A stretch of DNA of 64,000 bases from positions 29,389,254 through 29,453,253 of the forward strand of contig NC_133621.1 of assembly GCF_048593235.1 (NCBI RefSeq), given 5' to 3'. Position 1 is the stretch's first letter. Each line of letters starts with the position of its first letter. The notes below the pieces were generated by a model that saw nothing but the letters and a program-made list of their open reading frames with translations, made no database searches and was not told where the DNA came from. Source of the stretch: Sminthopsis crassicaudata. Taxonomy: Eukaryota. The position numbers and the translations under genes were made by a program. This document shows positions 52,791-56,799 of the stretch, piece after piece.

Positions 52791-53949
52791 CCCAAGTAAT
52801 TGTGAGCAACGATAAGGTGAGGGCCAAAATCCATAATTACATTGATAGAAGAAAATGCTGAGTGGGGAAGCTACCTCTACCAATGAAGGTTAGTATCTTC
52901 TACAATTGGTAGTCTTAAAGATTTGGGGGGCAATGAGAAGCTAAGATACTTCTCAGAATCACACAGAATCATGCAGTGTCAGAAATATAGATTCCTAGAT
53001 GTCCTGTTCTCTTTCTAACATGCTCTATGTCCTCTCAGAAATTTGAGCTATTATATTATTATTAATAATACATTTTAGCTGCTTTAAGAACTGTATACAT
53101 AGATACATTGGGCAAAAGATGGACACCACAAATTATGACTGAGAAAAAGGACTAGGATCTCTTAGATAAAGAATGAGATACGGAATATCTTTGGTGGATT
53201 AGAGTGATTTTGTGAAAATGCCTTCTTGAGTAGTCTGTGGGAAGAGGGGAGAGATCTAATGCTTCCATTAAAATGTTATTCTATGTAGCATTTGATAAGA
53301 ACTTATACATCCAGCTTTCACATGGTTTAAAGGAAAAAAATACTTGATTTCGAATCAGAAAAACAGTTCAAATATTGGATGCTATTTAATCAATGTGACT
53401 TGAACAAGGTCATTAATCTTCTGAAACTAATGTGAAGTAGTTGTGGTGAGATGATTGAATTAGATCATTAAATCATAGAGTAAAGCTCTATCAGAAGCTA
53501 TCTAGTTAGTCCCTCATATTACAAAAAAGGAAACTGAGTCCTAGAGGAGTTAACTGATGTACTCAATGCTGCACTGGTTGTTAGTTACTGAGATAGGATA
53601 ATTTGAACTCATTCCAAATTTCAAGATCTTTTAACTGAGTGGAACTGCATCTCTGATAACTACTAAGATTCATTTAACCTATGAACCCTAGGATCTAAGT
53701 ATTTCTGTTTTGTTTTCTCCATCAAAAATAGTGGATTAGAGGTAGTAGCCCAGCTGAAGTCTTTCAATATTCTCCTAGAAACAACTTTAAAATAACTCCT
53801 CAACTCAAATTATAGAGCAGCAGAGATTCCTTTTCTCTGTAAGACAATTTAGGAAGTCAACAGAATAGACCTATGGCCCTGAGGAGGAGAACTGTCCCAA
53901 GCATACACAAATGGCAAGATCAACAGTGGCAATAGCATCTTCAGGATGC

Positions 53950-54445
53950 TCATCAATTTGATGAACATGTTATAGAATATGGTTTTGAAGTAAAAATATT
54001 GTTAGAAATGATGAGGGAGAAAAATTCAGAGAAACCTAAGAAGATCTAGATGAACTAATATAATATGCAATGAAGAGAACTAGAAGATCATTGTACATAG
54101 TGAAAGCAGTATTATGATAATGCTCAAATGTAAAAGATTTGGCTATTCTGATTAATGAAGTGATACAACACAATTCCAGAGGACTGATAATGAAAAAATG
54201 CTATCTATCTCCGGAAAGACAACTGGCGAAACCTGAGTTCAAATTGAAGTATAATTTCCCCCCTTTTTTTTGGAATATAGCTAATATGAAAATGTTTTAC
54301 ATGATTTCACATGAATAATTTATATCATATTGCTTACCTTCTCAGTGAATATATAATAGGGTGGGGGGATATGAGATTATTTTGAACTCAAAAGATAAAA
54401 AGAAAAGAATGCTAATGAATAAATAAATAATAGATAAAAATAAAC
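53950..54445 (+). mobile_element. Old sense L1 3' end with A-rich tail
   Basis: GTTAGAAATGATGAG...TTCAGAGAAACCTAAGAAGATCTAGATGAACTAAT...GAAGAGAACTAGAAGATCATTGTACATAGT...AATAAATAAATAA. Confidence 0.8.
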
Positions 54446-54814
54446 ATGCATAGTCCAGAGGGAAAAATAAGAAAAAGAAATAATTCCTACCTACAGGGAA
54501 ATGATATAAAAAAGAAGTTCAGAAAGATTGAGGCAAAGATGGATCATCTTTGTGCTCCAGTTCTAATAATCAATGGACAATTGAAAAATAAAATTAAAAA
54601 ATTGAGTTGATTGTTAAAGTTCTTATGGTGAATTACTGAATACCGTGTTTCCCCGATAATAAGACCTATCCTGAAAATAAGACACCCACATACTCTTTAA
54701 TATTCCGCTAAAATAAGCCCTCCCCCGAAAATAAGCCCTATCGAACTTACTATGAAAACGGTCATCATGGTGATCCCCTGCGCTATATGCTGTGTAGCGG
54801 TACCTTCAGTAAGC

Positions 54815-54988
54815 AGCGCCGCCCTCCCCTCCCGGGTGAAACGCACGTCGCGCTCCGAGCTGCATCCAATCAGAGCTGCAGCAGTGAGCGCGTCATCCTC
54901 TTCTTCCCTGGTGATTTGCTTGCTGGCGCTACTGAGAGCAGCGCCGCGGAGTAGAGCTGAGACAGGACCATCTAAAAACTCGGTAAGT
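54815..54988 (+). promoter_or_regulatory. Promoter-like cassette in the MITE: GC-box-like tract, GCACGT, CCAATCAG, then splice donor
   Basis: CGCCGCCCTCCCCTCCC near 54817-54833, GCACGT at 54843-54848, CCAATCAG at 54866-54873, CG|GTAAGT with GT at 54983-54984. Motifs only; no activity data. Confidence 0.4.
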
Positions 54989-55022
54989 TCAGTAAGCGAT
55001 GGAGAATAAAATAAGCACTCAG

Positions 55023-55148
55023 GGGGCATGATGGAGGCTAAAAGGGGCATGATGGAGGCTAAAATGGGCATGATGGAGGATAAAAGGGGCATGATGGAGG
55101 CTAAAATGGGCATGATGGAGGATAAAAGGGGCATGATGGAGGATAAAA
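55023..55148 (+). repeat. Six-copy 21-bp minisatellite inside the MITE
   Basis: Units (G/T)GGGCATGATGGAGG(C/A)TAAAA start at 55023, 55044, 55065, 55086, 55107 and 55128. Confidence 0.97.
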
Positions 55149-56799
55149 TAAGCCCTCCCCTGAAAATAAGCCCTCTGGTGTTTTTTAGTCCCAAAAAATA
55201 ATAAGACAGTGTCTTATTATCGGGGAAACACGGTAGTTATACTAATTTAGTAAAATGATAGTAAAATGTTGAATAATAGAGTTAATTTGGATTTAGACTT
55301 TGGGAGAATTTATGATATATTTCCTAAGCACACTATTGCTGATGATTGGTAAAGGTAGCTTACAAATAAAATTAATGATAGAGAAAATGTCTCCTTGGAA
55401 TCAATTTAATTCAGTTCTACAAAACATTTATTATCTACTTGCTATGTGCAAGGCATTTACCTAGTTGCTAAAGATATGAAGATGAAAAATGGCAAAACCC
55501 TTGCTTTAAGAGGAAGTAAAATTTAAAATATATATATAGATTTAAAATTACAGATTCTGAATTCAAATCATGCTTTAACCCTCGTGGGACCTTGAGAAAG
55601 GTACCTATCTTCTCCACACCTTAGTTTCACTGTCAATGAAATGCAATGAAGTAGGATAATGCTATTAAAGGCCCTCTCAGATTGAGATTCCATGATTCTG
55701 TGATGGATGTTAAGAGTAAAGGATATCATGATGTACAAAAAGATGTTACAAATAATTTAATGCACACAATGAGGAGACAGTCACATTTCACTGAGGGGAA
55801 TCAACAAAGATTTCATGTAGGAGACCATTCTTGAGACAGATTAAAAAAAAAAAAAGCCTTGGTCAAGGGAAAAAGGAAGTAACAATGGATAGTTGGGAGG
55901 AAATGCAATACACACTGGGGAATGAATGGTAGAGTATGTTGAAATTGAGGAGTATGGGTAGGAAAATTTGGCATCTCAAGTTAAAAAGTTAGACTACATC
56001 CAGTGGAAAAACTTTGAATGCCATTCAGTAAAAATTTAAATTCCTCCAAGGTGCTCAGAATCTTGACATAGATAATCCCCATGTAGAAAACCATGTTTCT
56101 GCTATTATTCACATAGGTCTTTTATTTCCAAAATAAATATCTCTTCATGCTAATCAGGTAGGCCAGTGTCTATTATTTTTGCCTAAACAGATGGAGAAAA
56201 TTGTTCTTTGGGGGTGTATATTTTGAAGAAATGAAAATGTAAAGACTGGAAGAATTCACGTTGGTTTCCTAGAGGAAACCAGTAAAATTGCTGTAAGCAA
56301 AACTATTAAATGCTTCAAATTTTCATTTCATTGCTTATGCTGAAATAGCTATGGTCTCTTACTGAGAGACAACCACCATCTAGAGTGATTTTTAAAGAAC
56401 CATTTGTCATCATTAAAAGGAATACATTTACCCTAATTTCTGAATGTTCTTAGGATGAAAATGTAGCCCCAGTTGTGCTATATCTGCATTTGTGTAGGCA
56501 TCAAATGGGAAATGTGATTAAGACACTAAAATATTTTTAAAATGTATGATAAAATGTGCAAGACTGAACTTGGTTTGACTCTGGATCTATCATTAGTTAA
56601 GTGTATAAGCTGGAGTTAGTTATTTATCTTTTTTTGAGAATTAGCCTCCTCATCTGTAAAACATGGATAGAAATAGAATTGTAACAGAGAGTCACTGAAA
56701 AGTAGACAAAGTTTATTCCACAATCTATCCACCCTTGCAAATGGGTATCTCTCCTCCCAAATATGTAAAATCTTAATACTGTTAGCTATATGGCAAAAA

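What the first reader, a model, noticed from the sequence alone, without database searches (positions are those of the whole stretch)
54641..55235. Pristine, CpG-rich Tc2/pogo-like MITE in a marsupial intron: candidate recent, possibly horizontally acquired DNA transposon family
Seen directly: perfect 23-bp TIRs (one containing two CpGs, undecayed at both ends), TA duplication, and about 26 CpGs in 591 bp by hand count versus about 2 in the preceding 640 bp. Every other DNA-transposon remnant in the window is heavily decayed. Established: CCGT ends with TA TSDs mark Tc2-type elements; the mammalian Tc2 families I know (Kanga, MER104) are ancient; horizontally transferred hAT elements (SPIN in opossum, OC1 in Tasmanian devil) are precedents in marsupials. 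Inference: this family transposed recently, needs an autonomous partner elsewhere in the genome, and may derive from a non-mammalian source; its layout reminds me of amphibian and reptile MITEs. I cannot tell whether it is already in Repbase or Dfam.
Basis: partly seen in the sequence, partly recalled or inferred. Interest (0 to 1): 0.78.

Follow-up and report, generated by a model that had tools for sequence, protein, structure and literature searches.

The report
Young Tc2/pogo MITE in a marsupial
This 595-base insert is a fresh copy of a thousands-strong family of small "jumping genes" in a marsupial genome. I found the intact enzyme gene that moves the family, and its nearest named relatives are in a bat and a lizard, so it adds a rare case of recent, horizontally spread DNA-transposon activity in a mammal.

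Summary
There is a TA duplication, perfect 23-bp inverted ends, and 26 CpGs in 591 bp (o/e 0.73), against 142 CpGs in the whole 62.5-kb window (o/e 0.08).

The element is a non-autonomous deletion derivative (MITE) of a pogo-superfamily transposon of the Tc2/"Passer" type.
- **Partner.** I recovered an intact 432-aa DD35D transposase gene (P0006). Its 5' UTR and 3' end match the MITE's interior and right end.
- **What the MITE keeps.** It retains the transposon's CpG-rich promoter-like core, a non-coding first exon and a splice donor. It has lost the splice acceptor and the ORF.
- **Abundance.** In the host species, summed word depth over the element is 2,500-7,000 times the flank depth, with almost no variants. 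Two other coded species carry a different subfamily.
- **Relatives.** Transposase relatives are scattered across bat, lizard, snake, frogs, fish, spider, leech and whipworm. dS is 0.39-0.42 to bat and lizard. A sugar-glider protein is 98% identical.

Horizontal origin is therefore well supported. The donor and the date are unknown, and the entry need not be recent. What is recent is the burst of the host's own subfamily.

The scan noted the same family three more times elsewhere in this genome. I could not check Dfam or Repbase.

The parts
54641..54642 (.). Left copy of the TA target-site duplication
   Evidence: in metagenome relatives 113 of 143 TIR ends are also flanked by TA
54643..54665 (+). 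Left 23-bp terminal inverted repeat
   Evidence: exact same 23-mer at the ends of autonomous and MITE relatives
54655..54740 (+). Left subterminal direct repeats (GAAAATAAG[A/C]CC motif, about 18-bp spacing), the likely transposase binding sites
   Evidence: families D2-D4; same motif array in L003 and L122
54741..54982 (+). CpG-rich promoter-like core and non-coding first exon of the parent transposon (GC 56%, CpG o/e 0.96; CCAAT at 54866-54870)
   Evidence: Positions 54897 onwards align to the 5' UTR of the autonomous copy L124. Promoter function is inferred, not shown.
54983..54988 (+). 5' splice donor (G|GTAAGT) of the transposon's 5'-UTR intron, retained without its acceptor
   Evidence: L124 has GGTATGT at the matching place and the acceptor CCCCCAG just before the ATG. 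The acceptor is also present in the bat and lizard copies, and a GTAAGT donor lies upstream in the bat copy only.
55023..55148 (+). 21-bp tandem array, 6 units, an expansion of a motif present 3 times in the parent's 5'-UTR intron; it runs to the deletion junction at 55143/55144
   Evidence: This part has far lower depth in the two other species laid (bins 54946-55119).
55144..55210 (+). Right subterminal region, matching the last bases of the autonomous element after its 3' UTR
   Evidence: The loose end before 55144 in host and organism-B contigs equals the L124 3' UTR apart from one base each.
55211..55233 (-). Right 23-bp terminal inverted repeat
55234..55235 (.). Right copy of the TA target-site duplication

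Best explanation
The stretch is a young insertion of a non-autonomous element (MITE) from a pogo-superfamily DNA transposon of the Tc2/'Passer' type.

**How it arose (inferred).** An autonomous copy lost everything from its 5'-UTR intron to about 90 bp before its right end, joined at a short ATAAAA-type microhomology. What remains is both 23-bp TIRs, the subterminal GAAAATAAG[A/C]CC repeats, the CpG-rich promoter-like core, the non-coding exon 1 and its splice donor. A 21-bp intron motif then expanded to six units.

**How it moves (inferred from family knowledge).** A 432-aa DD35D transposase (P0006-like: an HTH_Tnp_Tc5 domain plus a DDE_1 catalytic core) supplied in trans binds the ends. It cuts the element out and pastes it into a TA dinucleotide, which is duplicated.

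**History.** The host lineage, said to be the fat-tailed dunnart, amplified its own 595-bp subfamily to an order of thousands of copies recently. CpGs and TIRs are therefore undecayed. The transposon lineage reached marsupials by horizontal transfer at an unknown date from an unknown donor.

**Side effect (inferred, untested).** Each copy is a portable promoter + first exon + splice-donor cassette.
For: **Anatomy.**

**Family size and uniformity.**
- Summed word depth on the element is about 15,000-24,500 in run X2, against about 6 in the flank.
- In X4 it is about 172,000-242,000, against 34.5.
- Within the element no listed position has a host variant above 2% of depth. The exceptions are two 1-bp indels.
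- Organisms B and C share 11 near-fixed differences.
- Most copies in B lack about 54963-55139, and this part also has low depth in C.

**Partner.**
- P0006 is intact in two Logan contigs that are 100% identical over 1,494 nt.
- L124 bases 1-150 align to 54897-55150, and its last 18 bases equal 55144-55161.
- The 30 nt before that match loose ends in 2 host contigs and 28 organism-B contigs, apart from one base each.
- Pfam finds DDE_1 at 207-370 and HTH_Tnp_Tc5 at 71-134.
- I counted 35 residues between the second and third catalytic D in the sequence printed.

**Same ends elsewhere.** L003, L122, the lizard copy and, with decayed CpGs, the bat copy carry the same end sequences.

**Horizontal transfer.**
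- The tree places the marsupial protein in a shallow unresolved clade with whipworm, lizard, bat, frog and snake.
- dS is 0.39 to the bat and 0.42 to the lizard, with dN/dS 0.23-0.28. Bat to lizard dS is 0.26.
- Gao et al. report Passer in mammals only in bats and Afrotheria (PMC7386202).
Against: - All runs were Logan contigs, so depth is not a true copy number, and the tool says so.
- No pairwise divergence among genomic copies could be measured.
- The species behind P0006/L124 are unknown (coded or bare SRR ids). L124 carries the B/C-type variants, not the host-type ones.
- An intact autonomous copy in the host itself is therefore not shown. Only two contigs carry the partner's 3' junction.
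- The L124 contig starts at the equivalent of 54897, so 54741-54896 is not proven to be part of the autonomous element.
- Promoter and splice-donor activity are untested.
- A dS of about 0.4 to the nearest named relatives means no close donor has been sampled.
Confidence: 0.85

Rival explanations
1. The family entered Australian marsupials once, long ago (before dasyuromorphs and diprotodonts split), and has persisted vertically by continuous activity. On this reading nothing about it is a recent acquisition. Only the host's MITE subfamily is young.
For: Words of the element occur in 7 further coded organisms. B and C hold abundant copies of a sister subfamily. A Petaurus breviceps protein is 98% identical to P0006. 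Antechinus has 3,098 TcMar-Tc2 copies (PMC9631953). A dS of about 0.4 to bat and lizard leaves room for tens of millions of years of residence.
Against: If L124 comes from a dasyurid, 98% aa identity with a diprotodont transposase is too high for about 55-60 My of separate near-neutral evolution. The origin of L124 is unknown, so this is not decisive. OC1 shows that separate entries into Australian marsupial orders do happen (PMC4408412).
Confidence: 0.35
2. The family was acquired very recently and separately by the dunnart lineage from a non-mammalian donor.
For: This copy is pristine and the host's copies are uniform. Relatives occur in frogs, squamates and invertebrates.
Against: Other organisms hold a sister subfamily with the same core. 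The host subfamily differs from it by only about a dozen fixed changes plus an internal stretch (about 54963-55139) that most B copies lack, which fits divergence inside marsupials. The nearest non-marsupial transposase is only 82% identical. The exact 23-bp TIR is also found in elements whose transposase is only 62% identical, so TIR identity says nothing about how recent a transfer is.
Confidence: 0.08
3. It is an old insertion whose CpGs survived because the element is kept unmethylated, for example as an exapted CpG-island promoter, rather than because it is young.
For: The core looks like a promoter, with a CCAAT box, CpG o/e 0.96 and a splice donor.
Against: The AT-rich ends are also perfect (25/25 complementary, both TA copies intact). 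The copy matches the majority letters of a family with thousands-fold depth at every listed site. Hypomethylation would not protect non-CpG sites.
Confidence: 0.03
4. It is an assembly artefact or contamination.
For: No single contig bridged either junction by 31 letters or more.
Against: The element's words occur in 12 runs from 4 studies of the host species. Contigs run from unique flank into each TIR with 0 differences (records 13 and 15). The short reach is what k=31 contigs give at a high-copy repeat.
Confidence: 0.02

Closest known systems
Passer family of the pogo superfamily (Gao et al. 2020, PMC7386202), equal to the 'TC2' clade of Dupeyron et al. 2020 (PMC7325037)
   Same: TA target, a DD35D catalytic triad, and an HTH_Tnp_Tc5 DNA-binding domain plus DDE_1. 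The host range overlaps that given for the clade: spider Stegodyphus, leech Helobdella, fish, squamates, amphibians and bats. NCBI names the relatives 'pogo transposable element with KRAB domain', and POGK is Passer-derived according to Gao et al.
   Different: Gao et al. found Passer in mammals only in Chiroptera and Afrotheria, whereas here the hosts are marsupials. I did not place P0006 in a tree with their named reference sequences.
   Same: Same superfamily label and TA target (from my own knowledge, not tested).
   Different: Those are old and decayed. This family has an intact transposase, near-identical copies and undecayed CpGs. No Repbase or Dfam sequences were available to compare.
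OC1 (OposCharlie1) and hAT-1_MEu, horizontally transferred DNA transposons of dasyurids (PMC3621081, PMC4408412)
   Same: Recently active, horizontally acquired DNA transposons with abundant MITEs in the same host group. OC1 also occurs in one diprotodont (the honey possum), which parallels the Petaurus hit here.
   Different: Those are hAT elements with hAT ends and, from my own knowledge, 8-bp duplications. This is a pogo/Tc2 element with a TA duplication and an unrelated transposase.
Host-transposase fusion genes formed through a splice acceptor in front of the transposase ORF (Cosby et al. 2021, cited from memory)
   Same: The acceptor CCCCCAG just before the ATG is conserved in the marsupial, bat and lizard copies. 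Many database relatives are gene models that fuse host exons (SCAN, KRAB, R3H, DnaJ) to this transposase.
   Different: The window's MITE has lost the acceptor and ORF and keeps the opposite half: promoter, exon 1 and donor.

Membership tests
pogo superfamily, Tc2/Passer family | TA target-site duplication | tested here: met
   TA at 54641-54642 and 55234-55235. 113 of 143 relatives' ends are flanked by TA.
pogo superfamily, Tc2/Passer family | Ends shared with autonomous elements that encode a pogo-type transposase | tested here: met
   The exact 23-bp TIR lies next to an intact DDE_1 + HTH_Tnp_Tc5 ORF in L003. Near-identical ends occur in L122, Zootoca L126 and Rhinolophus L127. The L124 3' end and 5' UTR match the MITE.
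pogo superfamily, Tc2/Passer family | Transposase with DDE_1 catalytic domain, HTH_Tnp_Tc5 DNA-binding domain and DD35D spacing | tested here: met
   Tested on the partner P0006, not on the MITE itself. Pfam DDE_1 E 2e-19 and HTH_Tnp_Tc5 E 7e-11. 35 residues lie between D2 and D3, counted by hand on the sequence.
pogo superfamily, Tc2/Passer family | Phylogenetic placement inside the named clade | tested here: inconclusive
   The tree groups P0006 with Stegodyphus-, squamate-, frog- and bat-derived proteins, the hosts listed for TC2/Passer. No sequence labelled Passer or Tc2 by the papers' authors was in the tree.
MITE (non-autonomous deletion derivative) | No transposase coding capacity, but terminal and internal homology to an autonomous element | tested here: met
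   The three longest of the four ORFs lying inside the element have no Pfam match. The alignment to L124 shows the ORF deleted between 55143 and 55144.
MITE (non-autonomous deletion derivative) | High copy number of uniform short copies | tested here: met
   Depth is 2,500-7,000 times the flank and even across the 595 bp in two host runs, with almost no variant letters. This is a contig-depth proxy, not a count.
Kanga/MER104 (ancient mammalian TcMar-Tc2) | Sequence match to the Repbase/Dfam consensus; old, pan-therian distribution | not testable with these tools
   No Repbase or Dfam library was available. The youth of the family argues against identity with these relics.
hAT elements OC1/SPIN | 8-bp target duplication and hAT-type ends and transposase | tested here: not met
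   The duplication is 2 bp (TA) and the transposase is of the pogo type.

The most novel reading that the evidence does not exclude
The family is still active in the host and has moved between Australian marsupial orders.
- The insertion at 54641-55235 would be polymorphic. In an independent individual (X4) a right-flank contig carries 28 letters that do not fit the element immediately before the TA. That is the exact length a k=31 graph gives to an empty-site allele in a heterozygote.
- A near-identical transposase (98% aa) sits in a sugar glider, far closer than about 55-60 My of vertical descent would allow.
- The thousands of promoter + exon + donor cassettes would then be seeding new first exons in host genes.
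Probability: 0.3. Interest if true: 0.82.

Novelty: new member of a known kind. Interest (0 to 1): 0.6.

Why it matters
Recent DNA-transposon activity is rare in mammals. The known cases are mainly vesper bats, a few horizontally transferred hAT families (SPIN, OC1) and some mariners.

This family adds a pogo/Tc2 lineage with an intact transposase gene and an order of thousands of near-identical MITEs in Australian marsupials. A 2020 survey of the Passer family did not list marsupials as hosts.

It gives a second, independent system beside OC1 for studying how transposons enter and spread in marsupials. It also offers a candidate naturally active vertebrate pogo transposase to test. Finally, the host now used as a laboratory marsupial model carries a large set of identical CpG-rich promoter and splice-donor cassettes, whose effects on neighbouring genes and whose methylation can be measured.

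Tried and rejected
- **TIR in papers.** Searching for the TIR string found nothing.
- **Viral contigs.** Neither the TIR nor the transposase was found, so there is no vector lead.
- **RNA families.** Rfam and tRNA scans of the element found nothing.
- **Solved structures.** No PDB relative by sequence.
- **Candidate host partners.** L003, L121, L122 and L123 were examined as possible partners for the host's MITE. I rejected them because only their ends match. L121 groups with the spider Stegodyphus.
- **A possible ORF start.** I first read the loose end before 55144 as the start of a minus-strand transposase ORF. It is the partner's 3' UTR.
- **Exact TIR as a transfer signal.** I considered the exact-TIR match in metagenome contigs as evidence of a recent donor and rejected it. 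Those hosts look like a tunicate, their MITEs share only about 100 bp at each end at 75-81% identity, and the linked transposase is 62% identical.
- **Petaurus loci.** They could not be fetched, because the gene range or the file was too large.
- **Orthologous site.** Its state in organisms B and C could not be read, because the joints table was truncated and only one read-laying run was allowed.
- **Literature.** Searches for a described marsupial Tc2/Passer family found only a summary table for Antechinus.

Full report
**What is there**

The finding's coordinates are exact. Arms 54641-54665 and 55211-55235 are 25 nt long and fully complementary. That is a TA on each side of a perfect 23-bp terminal inverted repeat, and the repeat contains two CpGs. 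The 23-mer occurs nowhere else in the window even with three mismatches, and never in 100 shuffles.

The 591 bp between the TAs hold 26 CpGs (GC 49%, o/e 0.73). The 640 bp to the left hold 2 and the 640 bp to the right hold 1. The whole window holds 142 (GC 34%, o/e 0.08).

Inside the element are four features:
- Subterminal direct repeats of a GAAAATAAG[A/C]CC motif at both ends.
- A 250-bp core with GC 56% and CpG o/e 0.96, carrying a CCAAT box at 54866.
- A G|GTAAGT splice-donor motif at 54982.
- A 21-bp unit repeated six times at 55023-55148.

The three longest ORFs inside the element match no Pfam family. No Rfam family or tRNA matches either.

**A large, uniform, lineage-specific family**

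Sampled words of the element occur in 20 public runs. Twelve runs from four studies of the host organism (coded A) hold 59-92% of the words. Seven further coded organisms (B-H) hold 14-24%.

I laid contigs from two host runs and from organisms B and C on 2.6 kb around the element.
- In host run X2, summed word depth is about 15,000-24,500 over the whole element, against about 6 in unique flank.
- In host run X4 it is about 172,000-242,000, against 34.5.
- The tool warns that this is not a copy number. I read it only as an order of thousands.
- Within the element no listed position has a host variant above 2% of depth. The exceptions are two 1-bp indels, so this copy equals the host majority at every listed position.
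- B and C share eleven near-fixed differences (54695, 54697, 54900, 54909, 54910, 54930, 54932, 54942, 55186, 55187, 55192).
- Most B copies lack about 54963-55139, and C also has low depth there.

The 595-bp form is therefore the host's own subfamily, amplified after it separated from the B/C type.

Three other first-reader notes describe the same kind of element elsewhere in this genome. Earlier agents name the genome as the fat-tailed dunnart. I did not check either point.

**Junctions**

In host run X2, one contig covers 54291-54667 and another covers 55212-55831, each with 0 differences. They reach 27 and 24 letters across the junctions. That is below the tool's 31-letter rule but is what k=31 contigs give at a high-copy repeat. 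X2 may be from the assembled animal.

In X4, an independent sample, a 1,783-nt contig fits from 55234 rightwards and has 28 letters before it that do not fit the element end. Twenty-eight letters is the exact reach of an empty-site allele in a k=31 graph (28 + TA + 1 = 31). This hints at a heterozygous empty allele. The letters were not shown and I had no second call, so this is a lead and not a result.

**The autonomous partner**

- They come from eukaryotic DNA that is not CpG-depleted (GC 40%, o/e 0.87), and 113 of 143 TIR ends are flanked by TA.
- They carry MITEs of 318-734 bp that share only about 100 bp at each end with the window's element.
- One contig, L003, has the TIR and the same motif array followed by an intact 431-aa ORF with DDE_1 and HTH_Tnp_Tc5 domains.

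Using that protein as a query returned a set of transposases of about 430 aa. One of them, P0006 (432 aa), is encoded on two Logan contigs, L124 and L125, from different runs. The two contigs are 100% identical over 1,494 nt.

L124 is the parent type of the window's MITE:
- Its first 150 bases align to 54897-55150, including the GGGGCATGATGGAGG motif.
- Its last 18 bases equal 55144-55161.
- The 30 bases before that match the 'loose end' seen before 55144 in two host contigs and 28 organism-B contigs, apart from one base each.

L124 carries the B/C-type letters at all six diagnostic 5'-UTR sites. The species of origin of L124 and L125 are unknown to me.

**Anatomy explained**

In L124 the 5' UTR has a donor (GGTATGT), an intron of about 130 nt that holds three copies of the 15-nt motif, and an acceptor (CCCCCAG) two bases before the ATG. 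The acceptor is conserved in the bat and lizard copies, and the bat copy also has a GTAAGT donor upstream.

The MITE keeps the left end, the CpG-rich core, exon 1, the donor and part of the intron. It then jumps at 55143/55144 to the last 92 bases (TIR and TA included) of the element. Both sides of the junction read ATAAAA-like, which suggests a microhomology-mediated deletion (inference). The six-unit array is an expansion of the intron motif.

The CpG richness therefore belongs to the transposon's own upstream region. It survives because the copy is young.

**Classification**

P0006 has DDE_1 at 207-370 and HTH_Tnp_Tc5 at 71-134. Thirty-five residues separate the second and third catalytic aspartates, counted by hand on the sequence. 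DD35D with this domain set defines the Passer family of Gao et al. (PMC7386202).

The hosts of its relatives are the spider Stegodyphus, the leech Helobdella, fish, squamates and frogs. They match the TC2 clade of Dupeyron et al. (PMC7325037).

**Horizontal transfer**

| Comparison | aa identity | nt identity | dS | dN/dS |
|---|---|---|---|---|
| P0006 vs Rhinolophus ferrumequinum (bat) | 82% | 86.9% | 0.39 | 0.23 |
| P0006 vs Zootoca vivipara (lizard) | 79% | 84.5% | 0.42 | 0.28 |
| Bat vs lizard | 85% | 89.6% | 0.26 | 0.29 |

- The bat and lizard copies are the closest named relatives, and both are intact ORFs.
- From my own knowledge, host genes between marsupials and placentals have dS near 1 and are saturated against squamates. 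These values are too low for vertical descent.
- A maximum-likelihood tree puts the marsupial protein in a shallow, unresolved clade with whipworm, lizard, bat, frog and snake sequences. Pipistrellus pairs with Xenopus.
- The patchy distribution, the conflict with host phylogeny and the purifying selection are the usual signature of repeated horizontal transfer.

No close donor is sampled, however. The exact TIR is shared with elements whose transposase is only 62% identical. Their host looks like a tunicate: its PIG-F is closest to the ascidian Clavelina at 42% identity and E 6e-54, with the next best hit at E 3e-24. TIR identity therefore carries no dating information.

**More than one marsupial order**

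The 90% cluster of P0006 contains XP_068919392.1 of the sugar glider Petaurus breviceps papuanus. This gene model splices SCAN-domain exons onto a transposase that is 98% (423/432) identical to P0006. A second Petaurus gene model carries a 55-aa piece.

The family is therefore in Diprotodontia as well as in the window's host. This could reflect an old single entry or transfers between orders, as reported for OC1 (PMC4408412). Deciding between them needs the species identity of L124 and the Petaurus DNA, and I could get neither.

**Known or new**

- I found no paper that describes a marsupial Tc2/Passer family.
- Gao et al. list Passer in mammals only for bats and Afrotheria.
- The Tasmanian devil transposon study treats only hAT families.
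- The Antechinus genome paper lists 3,098 'TcMar-Tc2' copies totalling 1.75 Mb in a RepeatModeler table, without comment (PMC9631953). The mean of about 560 bp fits this family.
- Automatic libraries therefore probably already hold it. Dfam and Repbase could not be searched here.

I rate it a new member of a known kind.

**Limits**

- All read evidence is from contigs.
- Organism names were coded.
- I obtained no copy-to-copy divergence, no state for the orthologous site, no expression or methylation data, and no proof of an intact partner in the host itself.

Noticed in passing
L001-L120 (JGI metagenome contigs, e.g. L015:3614-4013, L053:8671-9092): More than 120 contigs of non-CpG-depleted eukaryotic DNA carry TA-flanked MITEs of 318-734 bp with the exact 23-bp TIR. 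The host is probably a tunicate (PIG-F nearest to Clavelina lepadiformis at 42% identity). This TIR is therefore conserved across very distant hosts.
   Followed up: partly
L003:37-1741: An intact autonomous Tc2/Passer element (TIR, motif array, 431-aa transposase) sits on a 1.9-kb metagenome contig. Its transposase is 62% identical to the marsupial one. The right end is cut off by the contig end.
   Followed up: partly
P0178, P0013, P0011, P0016, P0078, P0082: Many database relatives are gene models that splice host exons (SCAN, KRAB, R3H, DnaJ) onto this transposase. This fits the conserved splice acceptor just before the ATG. Some may be real host-transposase fusion genes, including a SCAN fusion in the sugar glider.
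   Followed up: no
L127:36368-37663 and L126:1501-2796: Both the greater horseshoe bat copy and the common lizard copy of this transposase are intact ORFs. dS between them is only 0.26, itself a case of bat-squamate horizontal transfer.
   Followed up: partly
window 53728-53814 and 54250-54336: Two short stretches in the left flank have very high contig depth in all four runs (hundreds to about 100,000). They are pieces of abundant interspersed repeats shared by organisms A, B and C. I did not classify them.
   Followed up: no
window 55235-55238 / 54639 (organism B, table 5c): A contig in organism B joins an element's right end to another element's left end with 10 letters between. This means adjacent or nested insertions of the family in that species.
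   Followed up: no
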